This document shows, piece after piece, positions 1,102 to 63,641 of a DNA stretch of 64,000 nt. The stretch's first letter is position 1; the number at the start of each line of letters is the position of its first letter. This stretch comes from Octopus bimaculoides (lineage: Eukaryota). The stretch spans positions 136,615,324 through 136,679,323 of the forward strand of contig NC_068981.1 of the NCBI RefSeq assembly GCF_001194135.2, in the 5' to 3' direction. Position numbers and translations under genes: made by a program. A model generated the notes under the pieces. That model saw only the letters and a program-made list of their open reading frames with translations, searched no databases and was not told the origin of the DNA.

Positions 1102-1707
1102 NNNNNNNNNNNNNNNNNNNNNNNNNNNNNNNNNNNNNNNNNNNNNNNNNNNNNNNNNNNNNNNNNNNNNNNNNNNNNNNNNNNNNNNNNNNNNNNNNNN
1201 NNNNNNNNNNNNNNNNNNNNNNNNNNNNNNNNNNNNNNNNNNNNNNNNNNNNNNNNNNNNNNNNNNNNNNNNNNNNNNNNNNNNNNNNNNNNNNNNNNNN
1301 NNNNNNNNNNNNNNNNNNNNNNNNNNNNNNNNNNNNNNNNNNNNNNNNNNNNNNNNNNNNNNNNNNNNNNNNNNNNNNNNNNNNNNNNNNNNNNNNNNNN
1401 NNNNNNNNNNNNNNNNNNNNNNNNNNNNNNNNNNNNNNNNNNNNNNNNNNNNNNNNNNNNNNNNNNNNNNNNNNNNNNNNNNNNNNNNNNNNNNNNNNNN
1501 NNNNNNNNNNNNNNNNNNNNNNNNNNNNNNNNNNNNNNNNNNNNNNNNNNNNNNNNNNNNNNNNNNNNNNNNNNNNNNNNNNNNNNNNNNNNNNNNNNNN
1601 NNNNNNNNNNNNNNNNNNNNNNNNNNNNNNNNNNNNNNNNNNNNNNNNNNNNNNNNNNNNNNNNNNNNNNNNNNNNNNNNNNNNNNNNNNNNNNNNNNNN
1701 NNNNNNN
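1102..1707. other. Assembly gap (others near 4819-4918, 21264-21502, 51763-52486, 55057-55405, 61118-61193, 62533-63038, plus several ~10-N gaps)
   Basis: Runs of N, mostly flanked by (TA)n or (TG)n. Confidence 0.98.
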
Positions 1708-4580: not shown

Positions 4581-4918
4581 ATGCATATTACACATGCACA
4601 GGAAGGGCAACCAGCTGTAGAAACTCTGCCAAATCAGATTGGAGCCTGGTGTAGCCATCTAGTTTCACCAGTCCTCAGTCAAATCGTCCAACCCATGCTA
4701 GCATGGAAAGCGGATGTTAAACAACGATATATATATCATCATCATCATCATCATCGTTTAACGTCCGCTTTCCTGAGTGGTTGGCGTTAGGAAGGGCATC
4801 CAGCTGTAGAAACTCTGCNNNNNNNNNNNNNNNNNNNNNNNNNNNNNNNNNNNNNNNNNNNNNNNNNNNNNNNNNNNNNNNNNNNNNNNNNNNNNNNNNN
4901 NNNNNNNNNNNNNNNNNN

Positions 4919-7638: not shown

Positions 7639-8608
7639 TACATACACACTTTTGTACAAAATTTTCCATAGGTGTCAACATAGACTCTCTCACTCGTAAT
7701 GCCTGTATGTTCCAAAAATGTAATTTTCCCAAATAAAGTGTACTTCATATTCAAGGCTTTGATGAAGCTATATGGTGTTATCCAGGTACTCAACTAAGAG
7801 TCCACCACATCTCATAGCAGAAACAGCTGTAAGCTAATGAAGTTCATTACATAACCTTTGTTTTTTTTTCTGGTGTCATCTCTCTGTTATCATTATTACT
7901 CTATACTCATCCAACATTGTGGTTGGGAAACAAGCTTCTTAACCACACAGCCACACTTATGCCTATACTTACATAAATACACACACACATGCACATGTCT
8001 GCATGTGTGCACGCGCACGTGCATGTGTGTGTGTGTGTGTGTGATGTAGAAAATTGGATTTACAGAATGAAGCAGAATACAAAGTAAGTACTCCCACAAG
8101 GTATCAGCTATCAATTCACATTGTACTTAAATTACAATGTAGTTTAACTTGTTCATGCAACAAAAAAATCCATAATATTCAAGTAGTATCTATTTCCATG
8201 AGGAGTAAATAATGACCACAAAATCAGGAAGTATGGGAACAAATACAGACTTATTATTTCCATATGATTCCCAGATGATTACAGCTGTTTCATAACTTCC
8301 TCAATATTGTATTATTAATTCCAATATCCCAATTTACATATGTACATTTTACATCAATATCTATATTTATTGTTATATAATACAATTGTATATTACATAG
8401 AGATGTATTATAGAAAAAAGTAACCCATTGGATCATATATACGAGAACATCATGGATATACCCAGGATTCAATTCACTTACACAAGAAAAATCCACTCTT
8501 TTTATACCAAAAATTGGATGCAGATACAATCAATAATTTGATGTGTAATGGAAACCTTTATTAAAAACAGTGAACAGACTTGAAAAATATTTTTTCAAAT
8601 AATCCCCT

Positions 8609-9427
8609 TTAATCCTTTAGCATTTAAACTGGCCAAATCCAAACCAAAAATTCTATTGTTTTCTGTTCAAACCAATCAAATCCAGCCTCTCACATGTACT
8701 CTACAATGTCATTCTAAAAATTAACAGTCACACCATCAAAATCTTGAAACTACAAGATAATGCATGATTAATTCAAAACAATGTTATGGTGACTGAGACC
8801 TTTGGAGATATGCTGTGCTTGAGAAGACTCGGCAAGCCAAGTGAGACCGTAACTGTGGCCTATGCCAGTGCAGTATAACCAGCCCATTTAAGAGTACCTT
8901 TCAATCATTGGGCAACAAACTGTGCTTGCGAAGACCTGTTGAGTCAAGTGAAGTCATTGCTGTGGACGATGCCAGTGCCACCTGACTGATCCTGTGCCAG
9001 TGGCACGTAAAAAGCACCATTCAAGTGTGGTCGATGCCAGTTCTGGCTGACTGGTCCCATGCCAGTGGTATGTAAAAAGCACCATTTGAGCGTAGTTGTT
9101 GCCAGTGCTGCCTGACTGGCTTCCATGCTGGTGGCACATAAAAAGCACAATTCAAGCATGGTCGATGCCAGTACCGCCTAAATGGCCCTCATGCCGGGGC
9201 ACGTAAAAATCACCCACAACACTCTCGGAGTGGTTGGCATTAGGAAGGGCAGCCAGCTGTAGAAACTTTGCCAGATCAGATTGGAGCCTGGTGCAGCCTT
9301 CTGGCTTGCCAGCCCTCAGTCAAACCGTCCAACCCATACCAGCATGGAAACGGACGTTAAACAATGATAATGATGAATGTAAAGAAGCATTACACTTGAC
9401 AGAGTAATCTGAATGCTTAAAAGTTAA
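8609..9427 (+). mobile_element. piggyBac-type MITE family E interrupted by a family D element
   Basis: TTAA-TCCTTTAGCATT ... AATGCTTAAAAG-TTAA; internal MITE sequence resumes at 9376. Confidence 0.75.
8785..9375 (+). mobile_element. Family D non-autonomous retroposon-like element with four ~65-bp internal repeats and (GAT)n tail
   Basis: TAAAAA(G/T)CAC at ~9008, 9073, 9139, 9204; 3' end GGAAGGGCA..CAGCTGTAGAAAC...GGACGTTAAA..(GAT)n shared with >10 copies. Confidence 0.75.
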
Positions 9428-10346
9428 ACATGCTTTATAGCATTATTTGCAGAAGAACCCAAAAGAAATTACTGATATTTCACTATGCAAAACAGACAAA
9501 ACAAAATATATCTTCGAAGGTCAATAACTGCCAATCATCAAAGTAAAATACAACTTGTAAAAACACAATTGAAAACCTGCATCTATCAAGGTTTATAAAA
9601 CTAGTATTAAACAATAGATGGAGACAGATGAATAACAAAGTCAGCCTGAAGAATAATATATTGATAGTTTCGGATGGTCAGCTGTAGAGAGATATACAGT
9701 TCAAAGGTGTGATAGTAACATACTCACACTCACATAACAACAGTCATCTAGTCAAAAATCCTTTCACCCATACAAGAACTCAAACTATATTGAAAATAAC
9801 TGAGTGTTTATCACACAAATCGCTTAGACAGATAAACACACATATGCACCTATATAAACACACACACTCACACACACACACATAATAAGTAGAAAACAGT
9901 TGTGATATTCAAAGTTTTATAGGACATACACGTGTTTCATCAAAATGCCGAAATAATTACATAACAATGATGCAAAAATATTATGCAATCATGCATTCCA
10001 CCTCATCAGTGTCTCACCATAAATACAATAATCCATGTTGAAGCTCCAGATATATACTCATTATGCAAATTATCAAACTAATATATATATCATTCATTTA
10101 TTTTACATCTGTTTTTCTATATTATTAACAGGTAGAGGGCTGTCTGATATTTATTCTTCCCATGCTGGAATGCCTTCAGATTTTCTTTTCCAGTTGGACC
10201 AACTGTTCTTACAGAAAAATGTCATTTTTAACTTCTAACCATTACTGTACAAAGTAAGAATGGAACTCATCTGTCAGGCAGCCAGACTGAAGAATGCAGC
10301 TGGTTTTACAATTCATTGATAAAAGAGAACAAAGTAAAAGACTTAC

Positions 10347-10420
10347 TTCCTTTGATTATTGTAAATCCATAGAAATGCTTAAAGAGATAGTTCCACATAT
10401 TTGATTTAAAACCAACTTAC
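10347..10420 (-). other. Candidate recursive splice site (AG|GT) with 74-nt cryptic exon
   Basis: Minus strand TTAAC..TTTGTTTACTTTTTTTCTTTTCAG|GTAAGT, second GGAA|GTAAGT 74 nt downstream; unique sequence; stops in all three frames. Confidence 0.5.
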
Positions 10421-10885
10421 CTGAAAAGAAAAAAAGTAAACAAAGGTGAGTTAATTAATAATAATTTACAGAAATATATATTTACAATGGAAAACATGAT
10501 TTAAATAAACAGTTTTGAAAAATCACATAACAAAAACTCTTCTTGATAGGGCAAACCCATGATCAAAGGCTTTCTAACCTGACCATTCATTTTATTTTGC
10601 AGGTACCAAGGGAGATCTAGCTACTTTTTCTAGTGGACTAAACAACTGTGTTGATGTTCCTTCATGATCTCAGTTTCTAATTATTGATTAGCTCTACATC
10701 AGTCTTAATGAAGCAGAACCTTAGATCAAAGATGTTTCAGCTATGACTGTTGTTATCAACATCAATTCCTGGATATCACTGTGTAGAGTTTGAGGACTTT
10801 TAGGGCTGGTTACCAGGTTTCTAAGTTTCCACGACATTTAAGAGAATGAGATCACAACATTCTCACTGAATGAGATACCGGTTCA

Positions 10886-11072
10886 TTAACCCTTTAGCAT
10901 TCACATTATTCTATCAAAAGTATTGCTTATTTATTCACATTGCTTAGAATTAATCATGCTTTTTGTCTTGGAGCTTTGAGATTTTGATGAAGTTACTGTT
11001 AATTTTTTAGAATGATAGTGTAGGGTTGGTGTGGGTGGCCAGATCTGGCCAGTTCAAATGCTAAGGGGTTAA
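10886..11072 (-). mobile_element. piggyBac-type MITE family E (short copy)
   Basis: TTAA-CCCTTTAGCATT ... AATGCTAAGGGG-TTAA. Confidence 0.85.
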
Positions 11073-11406
11073 AGGGTTACCTATTTACAGCTGAGCAGAC
11101 TGGAGCAATATGAAATGAAGTGTTTCACTCAAGTGCACAGCACACTGCCTGGTTTGGAAAATGAAATCATGATACCCTAACACCCTAACCACTATCTCTT
11201 GATGTCATATATTGTTCTATGGTATAGTGTGCTTTGAGGGAGACTGCTGCTATTTCTGGGTAGTCTAACCACAATGTATAACATTTTCCATTGTCCTAGT
11301 TATCAGTTTGATTGAAAGGCAAGATCCCTTGAGAAGTATTAAAAGTTCTAAAATAGAGTTTAAAGATCAATATCCAGTTAAAGAGATTATGTTCTCAAGA
11401 GATGTT

Positions 11407-11658
11407 TTAACCCTTCTGATGCCAATCCACCTGGGAACAAGATTCTATGATACAATACCATTCCTTTTAAAATGATAATCTCTAAATTAAAACATTCCTT
11501 TGTGGTTTTTATGACAGAACTTTTTGCTAAGTTATATTTCACACAACAACTTAATGATGAAGAGTTCAGTCAATTTACTAAATTCTTCATAACATTTGAT
11601 TGTTTTCAAACTTAATTAAAACGTAATTTTATTAAAGAGCTAGTGATGACAGGGTTAA
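11407..11658. mobile_element. Second TTAA-flanked MITE-like element
   Basis: TTAA-CCCT ... AGGG-TTAA ends; related sequence begins at ~5325. Confidence 0.45.
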
Positions 11659-12779
11659 GTGAGGGAGGTTTTAGTTTTAAGTTTTCAGATTTGTTAGAAA
11701 TATTTCTGGTTGACTGACAACATATGTTACACTTTATATTCTTTTATTTGTTCGTCAGAGGCAGTTGCATTTTAGCCACTGCCAAGTAGTGTGTTTAATT
11801 TGTTCCCTGAATATCGCCATGAATTTCCCCCTTGTTTTTCAAAAATCCCACCCCACTAAATCTCAAAATAGTGGGGGAAAATCTACCCTATTTTTCAAAT
11901 CCTGGCAGCAACACTGGAGCTGGAAGCAGGATAATAATCTAATTCTACACTTTATCACATTCAAGAATATAGACATGTTTTGTAAGCACAACACACGTGG
12001 AGTAAAAAAAAAAAAAAAAAAACACTACCGGTGAGCATGCGCACAACAGACAAACACCGCATCACTGGAACTGTGAAGCACACAGTTCAACACAATGATT
12101 TTTGTATTTTTACATAAACTAGGGGATGGTTACTGACATTAAGCTTAAGGATTATATAATGTACAAGTATAAAGAAAGAATTAAAGAAAAAAAGGACTCA
12201 TTATATTGAATGTTATCAATAATATCATGTAGAAATAGGGGGTGCTGCAGTTCCACTCTGCCTATACACGAGCTGCCACTGATCAGAGGAGTAGTGATAG
12301 AAGGGGAAGGGGAAGAAAGAGCACTCCTAGCCATATTTTAGATTTTCTTTATTTGGAGGATGAAAATGTGGAAGGCCAGGTGAATAAAGTACTGAACAAC
12401 TTGGAAATCAGTGGTTCATTTCATACCACTGTCACTGCACAGCATTCAGAGTCTGCTGCATACACTCTCAACAGCAGCGCCTTGATTTGTTGGTGCTTCT
12501 GTAGTAGTTGTCGTTCAGTCTATGTCAGCTCTGAACCAATGGATCTATGATCAAATGTATTCTAATCATGACTATCCCATTTTTATTCAGGAATTATGTA
12601 CTCAAAGTTGCATTATTTGATGTGCCCTTAAACAGGTCGGTTGTTATTTCAAGGATATTTGGCTGCTATTTCTAGTAGATTGAGCAACCATACAGAGCCG
12701 TGGTTCTGAACCATTTTTTACAGACGGGCCCCTTTGATTCCTGTTTTACTCTACCTCCATAGCCCAAGGTGCCCTACAA

Positions 12780-16230: not shown

Positions 16231-18197
16231 CTGAGTTCCTTTCGAGCGTTTGGGCCTCATGGAAGCAAAGTGGCCAAGTTCCTTTCAAGTGTTGGGCTTT
16301 ATGGAAGCAATCACCAAGACTTTTGGCATTATGTTGTGCTTAAGAAGAAGACCCATTAAGCTGGGCAAAATCGCAGTTGTCGCAGATACCAGTGTCATGC
16401 AAATAGCGGCTGTGATGGTGTCACATAAAAGCACCCTTTACACTCTTGGAGTGGTTGGCGTTAGTTGGCCTGAGGCTTTGGTTGGCCCGAGGCTATAGTA
16501 GAAGACACTTACCTCAGGTGCCACGCAGTGGGACTGAACCTGGAACCATGTGGTTGGGAAGCAAGCTTCTTACCACACAACTATGCTGCACCTAATTGCT
16601 AATACATTGGACAAAGTGCTTTATGTAATTTCTTCTAACCCTTTTTATGTTCTGAATTCATATTCTGCCAAGGTTAACTTTGGCTTTTGTCCTTTTTGAA
16701 GTTGAAAAAAATAAGTACTAGTTGTGCACTGGGGTCAGTGAAATTGATTTACTCCCTCTCCTAAAATTACTGGCCTTGTGCTAAAATTTGAAATCACCAT
16801 TATTATTATGTGTAGTGAGCTGACAGAATTCTTATCAGCTTGGACAAAATGTATAGTGGTATTTTGTCATTATCTTTCACCTGTTTCAATGATTGGACGG
16901 TGGCCAAGCTGGGGCACTGCCTTGAATTTTTAGCTGAATGAATCAACCCCAGGATTTATTTTTTGTTCTATCGATCTCTTTTTCTGAGTTCAATTTCCAC
17001 TGAGGTCAACTTTGCCTTTCATCCTTTTAGGGTTGATAGTACTAGTCAAGTACTGGAGTTAATGGTATTGGCTAACCCCACCCCACACCCCAAAATTTCA
17101 GGCCATATGCCTCTAGTAGGAAGAATTATTATCACCATTTTTATCAGTACCATCGTTATGGTGAAAAGATTATCACCATCATCATCATCATCATCATCAA
17201 GACTATTGAAAACAAAAACTAAAATTAGAATAGTTTAGTAAAATTTCAGGAAAAAAGAAATTAAAATAAAGAATGTTTAGAACAAAAAACAATTGAAGAA
17301 TGAAAATATGCCAAGGTCAGTGGCAAAACAAATACAGAATTATTTAAAAACAACATTTCAAGAAAAGAAAAATCAGTTAAGAAAAAAACAAAAAACGAAA
17401 CAATGTTTTTGTATTTTCAAATCATTGAATGGTGACAAAGGTGGGAGTTGGGGGTGAGAAATTCTTCAAAAATCGACTGTTTGTTAAAAGAAGGAATTAT
17501 TCACGATTTTATAGACTTGACTATTTGCCTCGCTACAGTCAATTAATTAATCGCGAATAGCCGAAAATAATAAAGTGAATTATATGTAAACTGAATGCTA
17601 AGATCAATAGACAGAAATAGGAGAGAAAAATAGACAATGTTTATAAGCTATACTAGCCTCTGACATTACTACATTCTTTTAAATGTTTTTAATGATAGAG
17701 GATGAAAATTGAATATTAAATTGAATAGTTTTGCAATAAACTATCCTATTTTTGTTTTGAAATAATAAAACCATAAAACCATTCAATGGTCATAAAAAAT
17801 AAATCACCATCAGGTATGGCTGTGCGGTCGGTTAAGAAGCTTGCTTTGCAGCTAAGTGATTTGGGGTTCAGTCCCACTGTGCAGCACCTTGGGCAAGTGT
17901 CTTTTATCATGGTTCTGGGCTGACCAGTGCCTTGTGAGTGAATTAGATAGATGGAAACTGTGTCGAAGCCTTTACACATTTGCTACCAGTTCAAATATGC
18001 TCGAGGCATATCTGAACCCATCAGAAAGCTATTCACTGTATTTTGTCATGGAGACAGTTTCTCACTGTGAGTGCATTAAATCAGGTAAAAGATTCTATTC
18101 GGGTTTGCTAAAGCATGATTTGAACTCAGAATACAAAGTACCAGAAATACGCTTGCACAAATATAAAAAAAAAAAATTAGTCAAAGACAATCCATTC

Positions 18198-21263: not shown

Positions 21264-21502
21264 NNNNNNNNNNNNNNNNNNNNNNNNNNNNNNNNNNNNN
21301 NNNNNNNNNNNNNNNNNNNNNNNNNNNNNNNNNNNNNNNNNNNNNNNNNNNNNNNNNNNNNNNNNNNNNNNNNNNNNNNNNNNNNNNNNNNNNNNNNNNN
21401 NNNNNNNNNNNNNNNNNNNNNNNNNNNNNNNNNNNNNNNNNNNNNNNNNNNNNNNNNNNNNNNNNNNNNNNNNNNNNNNNNNNNNNNNNNNNNNNNNNNN
21501 NN

Positions 21503-21799: not shown

Positions 21800-21844
21800 G
21801 AAGGAGGTGTATGTGTGTATGTGTAGGTATGTGCATGCACGCAG

Positions 21845-21875
<31 letters not shown>

Positions 21876-22570
21876 GTTGTCTGCTTATGTATGTGTGTGG
21901 TTGAACTTCGTGTCATAGGAAGAATTTATAGTAAGAATTTTCGTAGGAGTGGCTGTCTATTGTGTGTCTCCCTACACATGTGCATAGGGGAATGGTCAGT
22001 AGAAAGGTGTTTAACTGGTAGTTTGAAGTATGTGTGTGTGTGTGTGTGTTTTGTGGGCAGTGTGTGTGTGTGTGTGTACGTGTGGGTATGCGTGTACACG
22101 TTAGGTTGTGTCTGTGGAGTAAATGTACGTTACTCTGTGTGTGTGTGTGTCCATGTATGTATAATTGTGCATGTGTATGTATGAGTGTGTGTTGTGTGTG
22201 TATGGGAGGTATGTGTGGGTTCATTTGCGTGTGTGTGTGTGTATGTGTGAATGTATGTGTGTGTACATGTGTGAATATGTATGTGTGTGAGTATTTTGTT
22301 TGTGTATGTGTGCGCGTATGTGTGTGTGTGTGCATGTGTGTGAACGAGGGGTTGTGTGAGGAGGTATATGTGCGTTTTTTTTGTGCTTGTATGTGTATGT
22401 GCGTGTAGTTGTGTGTGCGTGTATGCTGGTGTGTATACGTGTATGCATGGGGTTGTGAGTGTTAGGTATGTTTGCATTCGCGTGTGTGTGTGTGTGTGCA
22501 CGTGCGTGTGTATGCGCATGTGCATCTATATGTGTATGCATATGTGTATGTGCGTGTTTGTATATATTGA
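21800..22570 (+). repeat. Long degenerate (GT)n-rich simple sequence
   Basis: ~770 bp of interrupted GT/AT dinucleotides. Confidence 0.9.
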
Positions 22571-23143
22571 GTTTGTGTATCTCGACCCAAATCATCTCAT
22601 TTCACCCGCATTGCTAACTCAGAAAGGGCATGAATGTCACAGACTCTCATTTTCCCCAAAAGATGATAGATTTAATGGAGGGGGGAGATAGTGTGAGAGA
22701 AGTCTCTGTGTGTTTCTGTCAATGAGTGTGTGTGTCTGTGTGATACAGATGATTGTATGTGCGTATGAGATTCCATGTGAGTGTGTATGTGATAAGAATG
22801 TGTATATATGTGTATCACAAGTGAGTGTGTGCAAGTATGTGGAGAATACAGGTTTATGTGATGAGTATAAGATGTAGGTGTACAAATGAGAGAGAGAGAG
22901 AATGTGTGTGTGTGTGTGTGTGTAGGAATAATACATAATTTCTATATGGTATTTGTTTTTGACATTTACTGAAAGGTGATTTTTCATTTAAATGTCTGTA
23001 TTGAAGCTGTCTACTGTGCAATAAACCAAAGAAGGAATTAGTGGTGCTGATATTCCTTCAGGATGTCTTGAAGTAGTTGGAACTTATTCATTTTCTCTCT
23101 CTTTCTCATTTGTTTCACATCTGTTTTTCCTAGCTTGCAGGGG

Positions 23144-23724: not shown

Positions 23725-24616
23725 CATCACATAAATAATGCAGTTTTTTCAATTGCATGGACTAAAAGTTGGAGGGGGATGGGATAAACTACTTGCATTA
23801 ACTTACTATAAAAGTAGGTAGTAATTTTGCCTTGTACTTATTCTTAGTGCAAGCTTTAAAGAGTGCAGTTCAATTTAAACAGTTATTTTTTCAAAGCTAT
23901 AATAGAAGTGGCAAAGGAGCATATTCAGCATATTTTGCTTTATGAGTTCAATAAAGGCAACAACGCAAAGGAAAGTGCGAGGAATATTAATGCAGCATAT
24001 GGGGATTGAACAATAAGTGTAAGCCAGTGTCAATGGTGGTTCCAGAAATTCCAAGCCAGAAACTATAGCCGAGAAGACGAGTCTCATCCTGGAAGATCTG
24101 TAGAGCTTGACAAGGACATCCTGCAAACCCTGGAGGAACAAAATCCCATTGTAACTGTTGATGAACTAGCAGAGAAGCTTGGATTTGGTCATTCAATCAT
24201 TCAATGACACCTGCGCTAGAAGAAAAACGACCACCTTTGGTTTCATGACGAAAAGTGTTCTTCCATCAGGATAATGTTTGGCCACATACAGCGAAAGTAA
24301 CATTCCAAAGTCTGGAGCAGTTTGAGTGGGAAACGATGCCTCACCCACCATATTTGCCAGACATTGCTCCATCTGATTATTGTTTATTCTGCAGTCTTCA
24401 AAATCATTTTTACAGAAAAAATATGAATTCTGTAGACGAGGTAAGAACAGTACTGGAGAAGTATTTTTCATCACGGACAAGTGAATTTTGGAAAAGAGGC
24501 CTTGCAGGTCTATCAGATAGATGGAAGAGCATTGTAGAAAATGAAGGAGATTTGTTTATCTTAATTTTGAAAAATAAAAGAAGTATAAAAACCGCATTAT
24601 TTATGGAATGACCCAA
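23721..24616 (+). mobile_element. Internally deleted mariner (D34D) transposon
   Basis: TIRs GGGTCATCACATAAATAATGCAGTTTTT / AAAAACCGCATTATTTATGGAATGACCC, TA context; HTH region (EHIQHILLYEFNKG..) joined to HQDN..PDIAPSDY with 34-residue D-D spacing. Confidence 0.92.
23902..24570 (+). pseudogene. mariner transposase pseudogene
   Basis: Start codon mutated to ATA, in-frame stops, WVPHEL-to-first-catalytic-D region missing. Confidence 0.88.
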
Positions 24617-32112: not shown

Positions 32113-32445
32113 ACTAACTCTACAGGATTGCCTTTCAGTGAAGGAGGGAGTTTGATATCGCTGCCCTCTTTTGAGTTTTTTGTCTTGATATTGGTTCATC
32201 TGGGATCTTGGATAGCAAGAGGTTAAGTTGTTTCTTGAAAACATCTACCCCCACTTCATGGAGATCCCTCAGATATTTTGGTAAGGAATTTAATAGCTGT
32301 GGGCCCTTGAATCCCAAGCTATTGCAGTACATGGTCCTCACCTTAGATGAGACAGCTAGGACGTTTGGAACAGTGCAGTGACATCCAATTTGAGGTCTGG
32401 CATAACTCTAAATTCCAAAGTTTGGTACCAGCTCCTCCAGTACAC
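32113..32445 (-). pseudogene. CR1/L2-group LINE ORF2 C-terminal fragment
   Basis: LVPNFGI...CTVP...NSLGFKGPQLLNSLPKYLR...FKKQLNLLLSKIPDEP...AAISNSLLH motif series. Confidence 0.75.
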
Positions 32446-33235: not shown

Positions 33236-33699
33236 CAAAGATATATATATATTGTGAAAGCATGTGGCCAAGTGGTTAGAGTATGGAACTCATGATCATA
33301 AGATCACAATTTCAATTCCTAAACTAGGTGGCTGTTCTGTTCTTAAGCAAAATATTTCATTTCATATTGCTTCAGTACACCCAGCTGGGTTAGCGCCTGA
33401 GTAATAGCTGTGTGTTAACTCTGCATTTAACTGACATCATGTTCAGAAAGGTGAGTCATACTTCTAGTAATTTATAAGCTAAGTTCTGTCTTAGATTTAT
33501 CATAAGCCTATAAACTTGTGCCCTAGATGTTGGGAAGGCACTCAGCAAGATATGGAAATAAAACTGAAAGAAGAAGTAATACTTGTAATAATAAATAAAT
33601 AAATAAATAAACTTAAGACTTGGTCTAACAAGCATATCCAGCAAGCAAAAACTACTCCAAAACACTTGACTTTAATGAGATTAGAACTCAGAATGTAAA

Positions 33700-34420
33700 G
33701 TAACCTACTCATTAAGAAGCAATGAAAACGGGCTTCTGGGTAAACCAGAATAAGACAGAAGTTTTGAGGATGAACACCAGACACCAAGAACCAATTCAAA
33801 CTGGCATTGAAACCCTTACAGAGACCATAAAGTTTGTGTATCTTGGGCAGAAGCATCTCAAAGACAGGTGGAGCAGAGAAGGATGTGAGTTCCAGGATTG
33901 GCAAGGCATGGTATGCTTTCAAAGCCATCTAACACCAAAAGCCTTCTCCCTCGTAAACAAAACTCCACATCTTCAATTCCAGTGTCAAGACCATTCTTTT
34001 TTATAAGTCAGAAACTTGGAAGGTCAGCAAAACCATAAAGAGTAATCAACAGACTTTTGTCAACAAATGTCTGCAGATCCTCAAGATCTGGAGGTCAGAC
34101 AAAATTCCAAACAGAAATCAGTGGGATAAAATATACCAAACTCCCATCAATCAAGAAATTCTGAAAAGGAAATGGGGTTGGATTGGTCACACACTTTAGA
34201 AAGCTCTCCAAGCAACATTGCAAGATAAGTGTTAGATTTGCAGCCTGAAGGAAAGACGAAAGTTGGATGACCAAAGAAGACTGGGAAAGGATGCGTGGAA
34301 GATGAAGTAAAAGCAATCTGTCTCCCTTGGTCTAAAATCAAGGAAGTATTCCAAGATTGTGTCAACTGGCATAAAATAGTTTCAACCCTATGCTCCTTAT
34401 GGAGTAATGTAGACCAACTA
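33700..34420 (+). pseudogene. 5'-truncated RTE-clade LINE, RT C-terminal part
   Basis: Frameshifted KTEVLRMN..FVYLG..RIGKA..IFNSSVKTIL..SETWKV..QTFVNKCL..KRKWGWIGHTL..PEGKRK. Confidence 0.82.
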
Positions 34421-34868
34421 ACTGACTCATTAAACATCAGGTAAATGGGTTTGTCCATTGCTCTAACAATTCTGCATTCCTCTGCTATATTTTAACTGTA
34501 ATTATGAACAATTTCATTACCAATGATATCTTAGATTCAATATAGCTTTAATAATTTTCTCTCATTGCTTCTAAAACTGAGATAGATTTGTGTAAATGAA
34601 GAAACCTGCCTTTATTGTTATAGCTGTTGTAAATGTTGGTGATTACATTACAAGGAGAAAGACAGAAAAAATTTTTTTTTGTTGCTGTCTTTTATGATTC
34701 ATTTATTCATAATGAAATAGCTTGTTCCTGATTTAAATTTTGCTTAAAGCACACATGCACGCACATTTATGCTCATACATACATTCATACCCACGCCCAC
34801 ACATGCATGCATACACACTTAAAAGCATACACAAAGATAAACATACATGCTTACACAACACGAACCTA

Positions 34869-43833: not shown

Positions 43834-44812
43834 AACTTTTACAAGATAATTGATTCCTTCTCTAAGGAGGAGTATAATTTTCTTTTCTGGTTATAATTTT
43901 ATTCTCTGTGGTAAGGGGGAGGGGAGGTAATCCGATGTTAGGCAGGTCAGCTAATAACCTGTAATGTAGGTGTTAGTGGTATTTAGAGAGTAAGAATTTA
44001 TCTTTATGTAAACATGTATTTTTCTCATCTTGTTTATTAAGTAATTCGGATTTAGCCATTAAAATGGAGAATTTCTCATTTATGCATAAATTACGGCAAT
44101 TATTTTTAAGATTATATGAAGATGTTTTGGCAAGGATACGCCATTCTAATCTATAATTAATGTTATTGTCTTTCAGTTTCTAGATGTGATTACTTAATGC
44201 AGTAGAATTAGCCTTCTATTTCTGAAACTTGAGCGATGGGAATTACATTTAAGTTTCAATTCATTTCTAATTGTTCCTATATAAGTTTTCTTGTAATTAT
44301 AGGAGAATACATCACATTGGTAGATTACAATTTTAGTTTTACATTTAAAGAATTCACAAGTATTTTTATTTCTGCAACCACATAGATTAGTTAGATTATC
44401 TGTGCCTATGATATGGTGGGTTGGGGGATCTTATTCTTCGTACTATCTTTATTATTACTACTATTGTTGTTATTCTTATTGTTTTTGTGATTATTATTAT
44501 TATAGGTATGTTGGCTATTATTCCTATCGTTATAATTATGAATATTTATGGCAAGTCTGGTTATTTCTATAAGGCTCCGAGTAAAGGTACTTAATTTTTT
44601 GTTTATAACCTGGTTTTTCCAATGCAATGCTGTAGTGTTCCTTATGCTTATTGAAGATATCTTCGTTGGATGAGAGATACGAAATTCTTTTACTAATGCC
44701 CTGTACAAGTCCTCTTTTTATAAAGTTTGGGTGGTTGCTATGTGCATTAATATATTTGAGGTTGATATTAGGTTTAATGTACAGTTCATGTAATCCCGTG
44801 CTTATATATCCC
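43834..44812 (-). mobile_element. 5'-truncated Penelope-like element inserted in the microsatellite of a SINE A
   Basis: SINE A head at ~44838-44990(-) and tail at ~43530-43760(-) flank it; ORF remnant plus 3' UTR. Confidence 0.8.
43973..44812 (-). pseudogene. PLE RT thumb + GIY-YIG endonuclease pseudogene
   Basis: YIKPNINLKYINAHSNHP..RISYLSSNEDIF..ALEKPGY; CGCRNKNTC; VIYQC..TYIG..NSHRSSF; STALSNHI*KLKD; CRNLCINEKFSIL; LLNKQDEKNTCLHKDKFLL; frameshifts and a stop. Confidence 0.88.
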
Positions 44813-45359
44813 ATTTTTATATATACATATATACACAAATGGGTTCTTTCAGTTTCTAGCTACCAGACCCCTTCAAAAGGCTTTAGTTGATCTGGGACTA
44901 TAACAAAAAACCCTTTCTCAAGTTCCTTTGTAGTGGGACTGAACCCAGACCATGTTGTTGAGAAGTAAACTTCTTGTCATGCATCCACACCGTTTCAGTC
45001 ATTTGTTTGTATTCAAAAACTGTCACTTCAAATTGGAGAATAAAATGTTATTATGATAGATCATTATACAGTTATTATACTATGAGCCTTCCTTAATAGC
45101 TTTCTCTCCATAACTTACAAAGCCTTTCACGTTTGTTTACAAATATTATATGTAGTATTAGACAGTTTAAGTATATATCAACTAAATATGGTTGAAATTG
45201 ATGGGTGAACGTTTGGCCCAATTGGATGCGCAAGGAGCCATTTTAGTGTTGATCTGTGGGTTTGATTCTGGCTGGGGTTAGCTCATCATTTTTTTCAGTC
45301 ATTTGTTTGCATTTAAAAATTGTCGCTTCAGATCAGAGAATAAAATATTACTATGACAT

Positions 45360-47817: not shown

Positions 47818-49083
47818 CAGGGGTTGGGCAAAATTATGGAAACACCTAGCATCATAGCATCATAATTTTGAAAAACCTATAAAACCGTCAAAAGCTTGTT
47901 TACTTTTATGTTTTTTGATTTATTATTAGTGTTGCTTAATATGTTTTGCTAAAATTGCTATTTCTTTTCAGATATCATCAGAAAAAGGTAATTAAAATTC
48001 ATGAAGATGACAGATCTATCGGACTTTAAAAGCAGTCAAATTGTTAGTGCTTGTATGGCAGGACCTAGCATTATGAAAAAGCTGAAATATTTGGTGTATC
48101 AAGAAATACTGTCTCAAAAGTAATGACAGCCTTTGAGAAAGAGGGAAAAACTTCCTCGTTGAAACAAAATTCCGGAAGAAAACCAAAACTTTCAGATAGG
48201 GACCATTGGACTCTTATGCGAAATGTTAGAAAGGATCACAAAAGTACAGCTCCCAAAATTACTGCAGAGCTTAATGACCACCTCGAGAACCCAATTTCCA
48301 GAAAAACTGTTCGCCAAGAGCTGCACAAAACTGAATTTCATGGGAGGGGTGCAATCAGAAAACCACTACTTTCAAAAACAAACATTGCAAAGCATTTAGA
48401 GTGGAGTAAAAACCTACAGAATTGGTCCTTAGAGCAGTGGAAGAATGTTATTTTCTCAGACGAGTCATCCTTTACCGTATTTCCAACCACCAGCTGAGTA
48501 TACATGTAGAGACAGCCAAAAGAAGCATTTGACCCAAACTGCCTTCTTCCAACTGTTAAACATGGAAAAGGATCTGTGATGATCGGGGGGAGGGGGCTAT
48601 ATCTTGGAAATCCACCTGTCCAATGGTTTCCTTTTATGGTAGAATTAATAGTCAAGACTATTTAAGCATTTTATCTGATCAAATTCATCCTATGGTTGCA
48701 GAATTGTTTCCGGAGGGAAACGCAATATTTCAGGATGATAATGCACCAATTCACACTGCTGAAGTTGTTACTGAATGGCACGAGGAACATCCTAGTGAAG
48801 TTGAATATCTTATCTTGCTACCACAGTCCTCAGATCTCAGTATTATTGAACATTTATGGTGCATTTGAGAAAAACAAGTAAGGAGTCGATATCCTCCACC
48901 ATCATCACTACAAGAACTGGAGACTGTTTTAGCTAAAGAATGGACAAACAGTCCTTTGGAAACAATTCAAACTTTGTATGAGTCCATACCTTGTAGAATT
49001 CAAGCTGTAATTACTGCCAAAGGTGGTCCTACCCCATATTAAAATAAACTTGTTTGAAATTTTAAGGTGTTCTCATTATTTTG
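47818..49083 (+). mobile_element. Tc1-like DNA transposon with DD36E spacing
   Basis: TA-CAGGGGTTGGGCAAAATTATGGAAACACCT left TIR; right TIR AGGTGTTCTCATTATTTTG lacks its last ~11 bp; ~1.27 kb. Confidence 0.92.
48007..49042 (+). pseudogene. Tc1-family transposase pseudogene
   Basis: SGRKPKLS, IRKPLL, VIFSDES, FQDDNAPIH..DLSIIEHLW; frameshifts and stops. Confidence 0.9.
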
Positions 49084-51762: not shown

Positions 51763-52486
51763 NNNNNNNNNNNNNNNNNNNNNNNNNNNNNNNNNNNNNN
51801 NNNNNNNNNNNNNNNNNNNNNNNNNNNNNNNNNNNNNNNNNNNNNNNNNNNNNNNNNNNNNNNNNNNNNNNNNNNNNNNNNNNNNNNNNNNNNNNNNNNN
51901 NNNNNNNNNNNNNNNNNNNNNNNNNNNNNNNNNNNNNNNNNNNNNNNNNNNNNNNNNNNNNNNNNNNNNNNNNNNNNNNNNNNNNNNNNNNNNNNNNNNN
52001 NNNNNNNNNNNNNNNNNNNNNNNNNNNNNNNNNNNNNNNNNNNNNNNNNNNNNNNNNNNNNNNNNNNNNNNNNNNNNNNNNNNNNNNNNNNNNNNNNNNN
52101 NNNNNNNNNNNNNNNNNNNNNNNNNNNNNNNNNNNNNNNNNNNNNNNNNNNNNNNNNNNNNNNNNNNNNNNNNNNNNNNNNNNNNNNNNNNNNNNNNNNN
52201 NNNNNNNNNNNNNNNNNNNNNNNNNNNNNNNNNNNNNNNNNNNNNNNNNNNNNNNNNNNNNNNNNNNNNNNNNNNNNNNNNNNNNNNNNNNNNNNNNNNN
52301 NNNNNNNNNNNNNNNNNNNNNNNNNNNNNNNNNNNNNNNNNNNNNNNNNNNNNNNNNNNNNNNNNNNNNNNNNNNNNNNNNNNNNNNNNNNNNNNNNNNN
52401 NNNNNNNNNNNNNNNNNNNNNNNNNNNNNNNNNNNNNNNNNNNNNNNNNNNNNNNNNNNNNNNNNNNNNNNNNNNNNNNNNNNNNN

Positions 52487-54681: not shown

Positions 54682-56548
54682 GGGAGATTTGGTTGCTATT
54701 TCCAGTAGGCTAACCCAACCACATAGAAGCTTTCTCATTGACTCATGGCCAAGTGGTATTTGTGGTTGAGTGGTTGACCTTTTCTCAACCAAAGGATGAA
54801 GAGATATCAAAAAAAGCCCTTACAACCTTAGGTATGATATTTATTGGAAAAGCTGGATACCAGCCTTGTTGCCATGTTACTACCAACCACACTTGCTTCC
54901 TGATTACTGTTAGAAAACAAGCAGTCTTGTGTAAAATATCTCTGCTAACAATTCATGCAAATAAACCAGTTTTTTTTTTTGTTTGCTTTTTTGAGAAAGC
55001 ATCCAAATCATTCTACCATGGAAAGAAGAATTAGAAAGATGTATATAAATATATATNNNNNNNNNNNNNNNNNNNNNNNNNNNNNNNNNNNNNNNNNNNN
55101 NNNNNNNNNNNNNNNNNNNNNNNNNNNNNNNNNNNNNNNNNNNNNNNNNNNNNNNNNNNNNNNNNNNNNNNNNNNNNNNNNNNNNNNNNNNNNNNNNNNN
55201 NNNNNNNNNNNNNNNNNNNNNNNNNNNNNNNNNNNNNNNNNNNNNNNNNNNNNNNNNNNNNNNNNNNNNNNNNNNNNNNNNNNNNNNNNNNNNNNNNNNN
55301 NNNNNNNNNNNNNNNNNNNNNNNNNNNNNNNNNNNNNNNNNNNNNNNNNNNNNNNNNNNNNNNNNNNNNNNNNNNNNNNNNNNNNNNNNNNNNNNNNNNN
55401 NNNNNCATACATACACTTACAGATGTATGTATATGTACAAATATTGATATTTAATCTCTTTCTCTCCCATGCACACACACACGAAACATAATACAAATTG
55501 GTGCCTGTCCAGATTCTTACATATTTTTCAAAGAGAATATACAGACTTGTCATATTTCATGAAACTCAAAAGAAAATAAAAATAGGACTAACAAACAGAC
55601 AGACGGACAGGCAGGCAGGCAGGCAGGCTGACAGACAGACCAAGAACAGCAGCCTAATGGTCATTGTCTCAATATTTTATTTCCTGCAGCAGCTTTTAGC
55701 TAGATCTATCTGATAGATAGGCAGAGAGGAAAGTCATTTTAAGAGATAATTAATACATTTTATGAGAATATGGAATTGGGGTGTGTGTGTGTGTAGGGAG
55801 AAATCATCAACAACAAAAAAAAACATTGTGATTGTGTTGATGATAGTGAGTATGATAATGATAATGATGATGTTGATAATGATGATAATGTCGACAATGA
55901 TATTTTTACATGAAAGATATGAGTCTGGATATTTACTAAAATTCCATATCTCTCAGAGAAAAATATGATTAAAAATATATGCTTTATGAAGTGGTAGAAT
56001 TTATACAGTGATAGATAAGGTGCCTTGTGGTATTAAAATTGTGTCGCTTTATAAATAAATATGGTAAGCAGCTTCTCACATATGTAATATAGTGAGTTGA
56101 AAAACTTCCATTAATTGTGGTTGGTCATTCAATCACACATATACTCCCCCAATAATGCTTAAAATAAATTTTAAAAAAAGGAGGGGAGATAACTCCAGTG
56201 AAATCAAGTAACTGAAACTTGTGGAGAATTCAGATGATGCAGATGTAAGAATATATTGTGCTTATTGGGTTTAAAGCTAACTGGTGAAAATAACAGACAT
56301 TTTCATCATTACTTATTATCATCATCATTTTATGTCTACTTTTGATGAGTTATACAGGTCATCATGGACTGAGTCATTTCTTACTGGGAGCGACTGCTCT
56401 CCCTGAGAAACCATATCCAGGCATGGGAAAATATCTTACGTAAACACAGGTGAGAGGTGATGACAGTTAGAGCATCTGGTTGTAAAAAAATGTCTGATCC
56501 ATGCAAAGCTTGGGAAAGTGGACATTAAAATGATTTATAATATCATCT

Positions 56549-61117: not shown

Positions 61118-61198
61118 NNNNNNNNNNNNNNNNNNNNNNNNNNNNNNNNNNNNNNNNNNNNNNNNNNNNNNNNNNNNNNNNNNNNNNNNNNNNGCATG

Positions 61199-62415: not shown

Positions 62416-63641
62416 CATATATATATATGAATTTAAATTTAAATATTGAAGTGAATCTAATGGTTTTTGTATGTTATTTTAAATGGCTTATAAACACCTT
62501 CCACACTGCAGTTGTTTTCGTTCCAGCACACGNNNNNNNNNNNNNNNNNNNNNNNNNNNNNNNNNNNNNNNNNNNNNNNNNNNNNNNNNNNNNNNNNNNN
62601 NNNNNNNNNNNNNNNNNNNNNNNNNNNNNNNNNNNNNNNNNNNNNNNNNNNNNNNNNNNNNNNNNNNNNNNNNNNNNNNNNNNNNNNNNNNNNNNNNNNN
62701 NNNNNNNNNNNNNNNNNNNNNNNNNNNNNNNNNNNNNNNNNNNNNNNNNNNNNNNNNNNNNNNNNNNNNNNNNNNNNNNNNNNNNNNNNNNNNNNNNNNN
62801 NNNNNNNNNNNNNNNNNNNNNNNNNNNNNNNNNNNNNNNNNNNNNNNNNNNNNNNNNNNNNNNNNNNNNNNNNNNNNNNNNNNNNNNNNNNNNNNNNNNN
62901 NNNNNNNNNNNNNNNNNNNNNNNNNNNNNNNNNNNNNNNNNNNNNNNNNNNNNNNNNNNNNNNNNNNNNNNNNNNNNNNNNNNNNNNNNNNNNNNNNNNN
63001 NNNNNNNNNNNNNNNNNNNNNNNNNNNNNNNNNNNNNTTAGTTAAAAAAGTTATTACTTTCATATGATTGATATTATGTATGACACAAAAAGAAATAAAG
63101 GTCTTTTTCCTTTTTTACATGCAGCTTGAATACTGCAGGTTGCCAAAGTCAGTTGTATAATATTGTATCATTGATGAGTTGATACACAGCATGTTGTTGG
63201 TTTTGAAGTGCTGATTTGGAACTTTTACTCACCACAGGGTAAAAAGAGAGAAATAAAATAAATAAGAAATAAATAAATACATAGAAAGAGAAATAAAATA
63301 AATCAGTTACTATAACTAGCATTGGTACGAATGAAGAAAGAAATTAAAAGTGATGCAGTTGCACCTAGTCGGCATAGAGTGGTACTAATTTTGGCATCTT
63401 ACCCAACTATTAGTAACTAAAATAAATTCAGAACCCTCTTGTACAGAATTCCTATTTTAAATACTATATTGTGCAATGGAAAGTTTGGGAGTGGGGAGAG
63501 GTGAAGAAAAAGTGGGAGGAATTTGATATCATGATAAAATATATTGTAATACATTTTGACAGCCCTTTAGAATTAAACTGTCATTACTTGTTATGCAAAA
63601 CAAACAAAACCAAAGGAAAATGTGATTTCAANNNNNNNNNN

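What the first reader, a model, noticed from the sequence alone, without database searches (positions are those of the whole stretch)
10341..10455. Textbook recursive splice site (AG|GTAAGT) with a 74-nt poison cryptic exon
Seen (minus strand, non-repeat sequence): branch-like TTAAC, pyrimidine tract TTTGTTTACTTTTTTTCTTTTCAG, immediately followed by a perfect donor GTAAGT (10420-10415). A second perfect donor GGAA|GTAAGT lies 74 nt downstream (10346-10341). The 74-nt segment has a stop in all three frames. Established: this layout defines recursive splice sites and RS-exons in long Drosophila and vertebrate introns. Inference: the window lies in a very long minus-strand intron removed in steps. 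I am not aware of characterised recursive splicing in cephalopods.
Basis: partly seen in the sequence, partly recalled or inferred. Interest (0 to 1): 0.7.

Follow-up and report, generated by a model that had tools for sequence, protein, structure and literature searches.

The report
Candidate recursive splice site, unverified
The minus strand carries a near-perfect "acceptor fused to donor" signal plus a second donor 74 nt downstream, the layout used to remove very long introns in steps in flies and vertebrates, but nothing here could show that this DNA is transcribed, spliced or conserved.

Summary
On the minus strand a branch-like TTAAC and an 18-of-20 pyrimidine tract lead into CAG|GTAAGT (junction 10421|10420). 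A second GAA|GTAAGT lies 74 nt downstream.

The composite is rare by chance. I expect about 0.003 per 64-kb window for the fused site alone, and 6e-5 to 2e-4 once a downstream donor is required. It is the only junction of this quality on either strand, and it lies in sequence that is unique within the window. It also has TT at -5/-6, a 116-nt AG-free zone, and a downstream donor weaker in its exonic half than the regenerated one should be. All of this fits fly ratchet points with cryptic RS-exons.

"Stops in all three frames" is uninformative, because 53% of such segments have them by chance.

The interpretation could not be tested. I found no coding exon in the window, so host gene and transcribed strand are unknown. 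No related genome or RNA data were reachable.

My best estimate is about 0.5 that this is a used recursive site, about 0.3 that it is an inert chance motif, and about 0.15 that it is an ordinary cryptic or non-coding exon. If real, it is a new member of a known kind.

The parts
10423..10536 (-). AG-free zone upstream of the acceptor. The previous AG is at 10538-10537.
   Evidence: the distance between successive AGs is 116 nt, against a mean spacing of 19 nt on this strand. Only 30 of 3318 gaps are 113 nt or longer, and many of those are N gaps or microsatellites.
10446..10454 (-). Branch-point-like pentamers: TTAAC (branch A at 10451, 30 nt from the AG) and the overlapping CTCAC (branch A at 10447, 26 nt).
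   Evidence: They fit yUnAy at a typical distance, but such pentamers are common, so this is weak evidence.
10423..10444 (-). Polypyrimidine tract tttgtttactttttttcttttc, including T,T at positions -5 and -6 (10425, 10426).
   Evidence: 18 of the 20 bases upstream of CAG are pyrimidines, the best value at any AGGT junction in the window. TT at -5/-6 is present in 196 of 197 Drosophila ratchet points.
10415..10422 (-). Fused acceptor and donor AG|GTAAGT, with the junction between 10421 and 10420. This is the candidate ratchet point.
   Evidence: The full CAGGTAAGT occurs once in the window.
10347..10420 (-). 74-nt candidate cryptic RS-exon. Its length is not a multiple of 3 and it has stops in all frames.
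   Evidence: The ORFs through it have no protein match. It has no predicted RNA structure (z = -0.47).
10341..10349 (-). Downstream donor GAA|GTAAGT, which would define the RS-exon. Its exonic half is non-consensus: A at -1 and G at -3.
   Evidence: The chance of a GTAAGT 30-150 nt downstream is 2.6%.

Best explanation
This is a candidate intronic recursive splice site (ratchet point) with a 74-nt cryptic RS-exon, read on the minus strand. All the steps below are inferred from the sequence layout and from the fly and vertebrate mechanism. None was observed here.

1. Pol II transcribes the minus strand as part of a long intron.
2. U2AF binds the 18/20 pyrimidine tract and the CAG. U2 pairs at TTAAC or CTCAC. 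U1 binds the donor GAA|GTAAGT 74 nt downstream, so the segment is recognised by exon definition.
3. The upstream exon is joined to G10420, and the first part of the intron leaves as a lariat.
4. The new junction reads [exon end]|GTAAGTTG, a regenerated donor. If the upstream exon ends in AG, this donor pairs with U1 over 8 contiguous positions. The downstream donor pairs over only 6, because its -1 is A. The regenerated donor therefore wins.
5. The 74-nt segment and the rest of the intron are removed in a second reaction, leaving no trace in the mRNA.
6. If the downstream donor is used instead, 74 nt are included. Within a coding region that shifts the frame and introduces stops.
For: - The motif is exact.
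- The composite is rare by chance. I expect 0.0028 per window for CAG|GTAAGT with 18/20 or more pyrimidines, about 123 per 2.7 Gb. With a downstream donor this falls to 6e-5 to 2e-4 per window, about 3-9 per genome.
- It is the only junction of this quality on either strand.
- It lies in sequence unique within the window, with no transposon-end structure around it.
- TT at -5/-6 matches 196 of 197 fly ratchet points.
- Recursive acceptors are stronger than ordinary ones, and this acceptor is very strong.
- There is a 116-nt AG-free zone with branch-like motifs at 26-30 nt.
- The candidate RS-exon is short and out of frame, like fly cryptic RS-exons of about 50 nt and variable length.
- No coding exon was detected in the 53.6 kb upstream or the 10.3 kb downstream on either strand. 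Fly recursive introns span 11-133 kb.
- In every invertebrate tested by Shepard et al., such sites are 4-22 times enriched on the sense strand of introns over 50 kb.
- Octopus has long, neuronally expressed genes.
Against: - There is no evidence that the minus strand is transcribed here, and no host gene was found. Absence of exons fits intergenic DNA equally well.
- Composition skews are contradictory. On the minus strand T exceeds A, but C exceeds G.
- Repeat orientation is uninformative.
- No conservation data and no RNA data were available.
- About a hundred equally good fused sites are expected by chance in a genome of this size.
- In vertebrates, sense-strand enrichment of such sites is close to 1. 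No mollusc has been tested.
- The motif definition was chosen after seeing the site.
- The exon searches used concatenated queries and would miss short exons, exons in repeats and non-coding exons.
- The origin of the window in a cephalopod is unverified.
Confidence: 0.5

Rival explanations
1. This is a chance motif with no function. An AT-rich, T-tract-rich genome happens to place CAGGTAAGT after a pyrimidine run, in DNA that is intergenic, or antisense to its host gene, or simply not used by the spliceosome.
For: - The bare AGGTAAGT occurs at the chance rate: 2 found against 2.5 expected.
- About 123 fused sites of equal quality are expected by chance per 2.7 Gb.
- Donor-like hexamers are frequent, with 78 GTRAGT in the window. 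A consensus AAAG|GTGAGT even lies on the opposite strand 26 nt away.
- No exon, gene or transcription evidence was found.
- Read on the plus strand, the pyrimidine tract is an A-rich run that could be an old retroposon tail. This last point is inference.
Against: - The joint layout with a second donor is expected only 6e-5 to 2e-4 times per window.
- It is the single best site on both strands.
- Several independent recursive-site features coincide: TT at -5/-6, the AG-free zone, and the donor hierarchy.
- If the site does lie in a sense-strand intron, signals this strong would probably be used whatever their origin (inference).
Confidence: 0.3
2. This is an ordinary cryptic, poison or non-coding exon. 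The acceptor at 10421 and the donor at 10346 define a 74-nt exon that is sometimes included, for example in a lncRNA, a UTR or an NMD isoform. The GTAAGT at its 5' end is incidental and is not re-spliced.
For: - A strong acceptor and a strong donor 74 nt apart fit exon definition.
- The segment is non-coding.
- Expressed exons that begin with a donor-like sequence exist in flies and in large numbers in mammals (PMC6224609 listed).
Against: - A perfect GTAAGT exactly at position +1 of an exon is what defines a recursive exon. Once it is joined to an upstream exon it becomes a strong donor, and it is expected to compete with the weaker GAA|GTAAGT.
- There is no evidence of transcription for this reading either.
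Confidence: 0.15
3. The site is part of a dispersed repeat or a structured or known RNA element, or it belongs to a plus-strand feature.
For: One third of the window is repeats. A perfect 14-nt inverted pair at 9734-9747 and 10743-10756 brackets the region.
Against: - There is no second copy of 9430-10880 in the window.
- The inverted pair has no target-site duplication and does not extend (read).
- There were no Rfam hits and no tRNA genes.
- There is no stable predicted RNA fold.
- The plus-strand reading ACTTACCTG matches the 5' end of U1 snRNA only over the 9 bases that any consensus donor complements.
Confidence: 0.05

Closest known systems
Drosophila intronic ratchet points with cryptic RS-exons (Hatton 1998; Burnette 2005; Duff 2015; Joseph 2018; PMC8605326; PMC6110457)
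   Same: - Fused (Y)n-CAG|GTAAGT with TT at -5/-6 and an unusually strong acceptor.
- A short, out-of-frame, non-coding segment ending in a second donor.
- A regenerated donor expected to outcompete the downstream one.
- At least 64 kb without detectable coding exons around it.
   Different: - Fly sites are defined by RNA evidence (junction reads, saw-tooth coverage, lariats) and by strong conservation. None of this is available here.
- The organism is apparently a mollusc.
- Host gene and strand are unknown.
- The candidate RS-exon is 74 nt, against about 50 nt typical in flies, where length is variable.
Vertebrate recursive splice sites and RS-exons in long neuronal genes (Sibley 2015; Blazquez 2018, PMC6224609; PMC6110456)
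   Same: An RS-exon is defined by a downstream donor. Its inclusion would give a premature stop. These sites occur in very long introns of large, repeat-rich genomes.
   Different: In vertebrates the motif alone is a poor predictor, because sense/antisense enrichment is only about 1-1.5. Validated sites sit in identified genes.
Pseudoexons, poison exons and decoy exons in long introns (e.g. DMD pseudoexons, PMC7175933; decoy exons, PMC7373989)
   Same: An intronic acceptor-donor pair encloses a short non-coding segment that would disrupt the reading frame if included.
   Different: Those elements lack a consensus donor fused directly to the acceptor AG. Here the fused donor gives a built-in route to erase the segment.
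Exonisation of antisense retroposon A-tails (Alu-type; recalled from memory, not tested)
   Same: The pyrimidine tract reads as an A-rich run on the plus strand, a known source of new acceptors.
   Different: No retroposon body was recognisable next to it, and the sequence is unique within the window.

Membership tests
Intronic recursive splice site (ratchet point) with cryptic RS-exon | [quoted passage not shown] | tested here: met
   an exact CAG|GTAAGT with 18/20 pyrimidines upstream. It is the only such site in the window, and 0.0028 are expected by chance.
Intronic recursive splice site (ratchet point) with cryptic RS-exon | TT at -5/-6 and an acceptor stronger than ordinary acceptors | tested here: met
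   T,T at 10425 and 10426. The benchmark is 196 of 197 fly ratchet points, and recursive acceptors are stronger than ordinary ones. No species-specific splice-site score was available.
Intronic recursive splice site (ratchet point) with cryptic RS-exon | A downstream 5' splice site that defines a short RS-exon | tested here: met
   GAA|GTAAGT lies 74 nt downstream. The chance probability is 2.6-7%. Fly RS-exons are about 50 nt and variable in length.
Intronic recursive splice site (ratchet point) with cryptic RS-exon | Regenerated donor at least as strong as the RS-exon donor, so the cryptic exon is skipped | tested here: inconclusive
   Both intronic halves are GTAAGT. The downstream donor has the non-consensus exonic bases G-A-A. 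The regenerated donor depends on the unknown upstream exon. It is stronger if that exon ends in AG (inference).
Intronic recursive splice site (ratchet point) with cryptic RS-exon | RS-exon non-coding or out of frame | tested here: met
   74 is not a multiple of 3, there are stops in all frames, and there is no protein match. However, 53% of random segments do the same, so this does not discriminate.
Intronic recursive splice site (ratchet point) with cryptic RS-exon | Lies in the sense strand of a long intron (over 10 kb) of a Pol II gene | tested here: inconclusive
   No coding exon was found in the 64 kb on either strand. Skews and repeat orientation are uninformative. The result is compatible with a long intron but does not show one. 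No annotation was reachable.
Intronic recursive splice site (ratchet point) with cryptic RS-exon | Evolutionary conservation focused on the AG|GT core | not testable with these tools
   No related eukaryotic genome is in the collections. The protein-database route, the metagenome scan and further exact look-ups found nothing.
Intronic recursive splice site (ratchet point) with cryptic RS-exon | RNA evidence: junction reads to the site, saw-tooth coverage, lariats from the regenerated donor | not testable with these tools
   No RNA-seq access. Octopus bimaculoides RNA-seq exists under PRJNA285380.
Known structured RNA or U1 snRNA gene (plus-strand reading ACTTACCTG) | Match to an Rfam family, or a stable fold | tested here: not met
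   Rfam at gathering threshold gave 0 hits in the whole window. The fold z-score is -0.47.

The most novel reading that the evidence does not exclude
This is a genuinely used, selected recursive splice site in a cephalopod. It would be the first in any lophotrochozoan. That would imply that stepwise removal of long introns through self-erasing cryptic exons is ancestral to bilaterians, and is used in the very long, probably neuronal, genes of octopus.
Probability: 0.45. Interest if true: 0.5.

Novelty: new member of a known kind. Interest (0 to 1): 0.38.

Why it matters
Recursive splicing is documented in insects and vertebrates. The held literature has nothing for molluscs: no paper combines "recursive splic*" with octopus. 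Cephalopods have large genomes, and octopus has long, neuronally expressed genes. How they remove very long introns accurately is an open but tractable question.

A single motif proves nothing. This one is good enough to serve as a seed for two direct tests: a genome-wide sense-versus-antisense motif count in long octopus introns, and a check of existing RNA-seq data. If the site were confirmed, the gain would be taxonomic breadth for a known mechanism, not a new mechanism.

Tried and rejected
1. **Related DNA through the protein databases.** I searched ORFs around the site and made exact look-ups of window ORFs. Nothing was found, so conservation could not be assessed.

2. **Metagenome scan.** An exact 29-mer across the site gave no match.

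3. **Finding the host gene.**
   - Pfam on concatenated ORFs gave essentially nothing. Concatenation costs sensitivity: one match fell from 24 to 16 bits.
   - All unique minus-strand ORFs of 40 aa or more and plus-strand ORFs of 37 aa or more had no hit at E <= 1e-3.
   - I had no positive control for these concatenated searches. Short exons, non-coding exons, and exons in repeats or N gaps would be missed.

4. **Inferring the transcribed strand.** TA and GC skew in unique sequence gave contradictory signs. SINE-like repeat orientation was 7:5 and 5:3. Both were rejected as uninformative.

5. **Other identities.** I checked Rfam, tRNA genes, RNA folding, tandem repeats and transposon-end structure. 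All were negative.

6. **More ratchet points on the same strand.** No other convincing site was found. The only other AGGTAAGT, at 16507-16514 on the minus strand, sits in a 20-copy in-window repeat and has 12/20 pyrimidines.

7. **Confirming the species.** Searching repeat sequence strings in the literature gave no hits. One broad literature search was mis-specified and wasted.

Full report
**1. What is in the sequence**

Reading 10600-10200 on the minus strand shows the following:

...aattaattaaCTCACctttgtttactttttttcttttCAG|GTAAGTtggttttaaatcaaatatgtggaactatctctttaagcatttctatggatttacaataatcaaaGGAA|GTAAGTctttt...

The AG is at 10422-10421. The first GTAAGT is at 10420-10415 and the second at 10346-10341. 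The interval 10420-10347 is 74 nt.
- TTAAC is at 10454-10450, with its branch A 30 nt from the AG. An overlapping CTCAC would put a branch A at 26 nt.
- Eighteen of the 20 bases before CAG are pyrimidines.
- Positions -5 and -6 are both T.
- The previous AG is 116 nt upstream.

**2. Is it more than chance?**

- The octamer AGGTAAGT alone is at the chance rate: 2 found against 2.5 expected. The other copy, at 16507-16514 on the minus strand, is inside a 20-copy in-window repeat and has a weaker tract.
- The composite is rare.
  - Y6-N-CAGGTAAGT appeared in none of 100 shuffles.
  - I combined a second-order Markov probability for CAGGTAAGT with the empirical frequency of 20-mers that have at least 18 pyrimidines (0.68%). 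This gives 0.0028 expected per window on both strands, about 123 per 2.7 Gb of similar sequence.
- When the core is relaxed to AGGTA, this is still the only junction on either strand with 16/20 or more pyrimidines upstream.
- A second GTAAGT 30-150 nt downstream has probability 2.6%. For GTRAGT it is 7%.
- The whole layout is therefore expected 6e-5 to 2e-4 times per window, about 3-9 times per genome.
- These figures are post hoc, because the motif was defined after seeing the site. They should be read as orders of magnitude.
  - Stops in all three frames occur in 53% of comparable random segments. One of those stops is built into GTAAGT itself.
  - Branch-like pentamers are common.

**3. Surroundings**

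- The window looks like a draft eukaryotic assembly. It has ten N gaps totalling 2,629 bases, about 35% G+C, abundant (TG)n and (TA)n runs, and 33.5% of its length repeated within itself.
- Transposon remnants are present, including a Tc1-type element at about 48.1-48.9 kb.
- The site sits in a 1.45-kb stretch (9430-10880) with no other copy in the window.
- No transposon-end structure was seen around it.
- No tandem repeat overlaps the site; the only one in 9000-12000 lies at 9000-9214.
- There is no Rfam match in the window.
- There is no tRNA gene in the window.
- No stable RNA fold is predicted around the site (z = -0.47).
- On the plus strand the core reads ACTTACCTG. This equals the 5' end of U1 snRNA only because any consensus donor complements it. 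The match does not continue.
- The plus strand also carries a consensus AAAG|GTGAGT 26 nt away. This is a reminder that single donor-like motifs are frequent.

**4. Gene context**

This is the weak point.

- Translated ORFs around the site found no protein at E <= 1e-3 in the 5.8-billion-protein collection.
- The same was true for all unique minus-strand ORFs of 40 aa or more.
- It was also true for all unique plus-strand ORFs of 37 aa or more.
- Pfam found only transposon domains.
- So I detected no coding exon in the 53.6 kb upstream or the 10.3 kb downstream, taking the minus strand as sense.
- That fits an intron of 64 kb or more, within the 11-133 kb range of fly recursive introns. It fits intergenic DNA equally well.
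- The searches used concatenated queries without a positive control. They would miss short exons, non-coding exons, repeat-embedded exons and exons hidden in gaps.
- Attempts to infer the transcribed strand failed.
  - In unique sequence the minus strand has T > A (z = 4) but C > G.
  - SINE-like repeats show no orientation bias.
- No other convincing ratchet-like site exists on either strand of the window.

**5. Related sequences**

- None could be obtained. The DNA collections hold viral contigs, metagenomes and bacterial/archaeal genomes.
- Routes through predicted proteins of public assemblies and an exact-match metagenome scan returned nothing.
- Conservation, the best sequence-only test, therefore remains untested.
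The repeat and microsatellite landscape is compatible with it, but that judgement rests on my memory only.

**6. Mechanism proposed**

1. The 74-nt segment is recognised by exon definition, through the strong acceptor and the downstream donor.
2. The upstream exon is spliced to G10420.
3. This regenerates a donor, [exon end]|GTAAGTTG, at the new junction.
4. That donor competes with GAA|GTAAGT. The latter has mismatches to U1 at -1 and -3, so the regenerated donor should win whenever the upstream exon ends in AG.
5. The cryptic segment and the rest of the intron are then removed.

In flies, weakening the ratchet donor switches splicing to full inclusion of the cryptic exon. The same experiment is the natural test here. 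Every step above is inference. Only the sequence layout is shown.

**7. Weighing**

- Shepard et al. found ratchet-like sites 4-22 times enriched on the sense strand of introns longer than 50 kb in the sea urchin and four insects they studied. Enrichment was only about 1-1.5 times in vertebrates. The background was about 0.1 per 100 kb.
- If cephalopods behave like those invertebrates, a site this good is more likely real than accidental, even with strand and gene unknown. If they behave like vertebrates, the odds are roughly even once the second donor is counted.
- The chance that the site is intergenic or antisense pulls the estimate down.
- My estimates are:
  - about 0.5 for a used recursive site;
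  - about 0.3 for an inert chance motif;
  - about 0.15 for an ordinary cryptic or non-coding exon;
  - about 0.05 for anything else.

**8. Comparison and novelty**

- The site works like a Drosophila ratchet point with a cryptic RS-exon, and it meets every sequence-level criterion of that class that I could test.
- The criteria that actually establish membership were not testable. These are sense-strand location in a long intron, conservation, and RNA intermediates.
- If confirmed, it is a new member of a known kind in a phylum where recursive splicing has not been reported. The held library has no paper combining "recursive splic*" with octopus, and only incidental co-mentions for cephalopods or molluscs.
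- A specialist would find it plausible rather than surprising. Its main value is as a seed for a genome-wide sense/antisense test and an RNA-seq check.

Noticed in passing
window 48123-48900 (+): Remnant of a Tc1-type DNA transposon. One ORF matches HTH_Tnp_Tc3_2 (E = 8e-15) and the next matches DDE_3 (E = 4e-8). The frame is broken between them.
   Followed up: partly
window 24255-24611 (+): ORF with a mariner-like transposase C-terminus (...PHPPYLPDIAPSDYCLF...). I recognise it from memory only. It gave no Pfam hit at E <= 0.01.
   Followed up: partly
window 33500-34500 and 32138-32407 (-): ORF fragments that look like tails of non-LTR retrotransposon reverse transcriptases. The only database support is a weak DUF6451 match (E = 4e-5, below Pfam's cutoff).
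   Followed up: partly
window 43976-44859 (-): ORFs resembling the region after the reverse transcriptase and the GIY-YIG nuclease of Penelope-like elements. This resemblance is from memory and was not tested.
   Followed up: no
window 8608-9427, with copies at about 4600, 21000, 32700, 41300, 42900, 54300, 59900, 60700 and 62000: Abundant SINE-like repeat with a G+C-rich head and a 65-bp tandem-unit region (3.3 units at 9000-9214). In all, 33.5% of the window is repeated within the window. ARAGORN found no tRNA gene in the window.
   Followed up: partly
window 9734-9747 and 10743-10756: Perfect 14-nt inverted repeat (ATAACAACAGTCAT / ATGACTGTTGTTAT) bracketing about 1 kb that includes the candidate site. 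It has no target-site duplication and the arms do not extend, so it is probably chance.
   Followed up: partly
window 10444-10451 (+): Consensus-grade donor AAAG|GTGAGT on the opposite strand. It is the reverse complement of the CTCAC branch-like motif and lies 26 nt from the candidate junction.
   Followed up: yes
window 21800-23000: About 1.2 kb of degenerate GT/CA-rich low-complexity sequence, with a GC skew of +0.30. It produces long spurious Cys/Val and His/Thr ORFs on both strands.
   Followed up: no
whole window, unique sequence only: Small but significant A>T excess on the plus strand (skew -0.026, z = -4) together with a G>C excess (skew +0.023, z = 2.6). The two signs do not agree on a transcribed strand under the mammalian rule.
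   Followed up: partly
window 1102-1707, 4819-4918, 21264-21502, 51763-52486, 55057-55405, 61118-61193, 62533-63037 and three 10-nt gaps: Ten runs of N totalling 2,629 bases, most of them flanked by microsatellites. Anything inside them, including short exons, is invisible.
   Followed up: no
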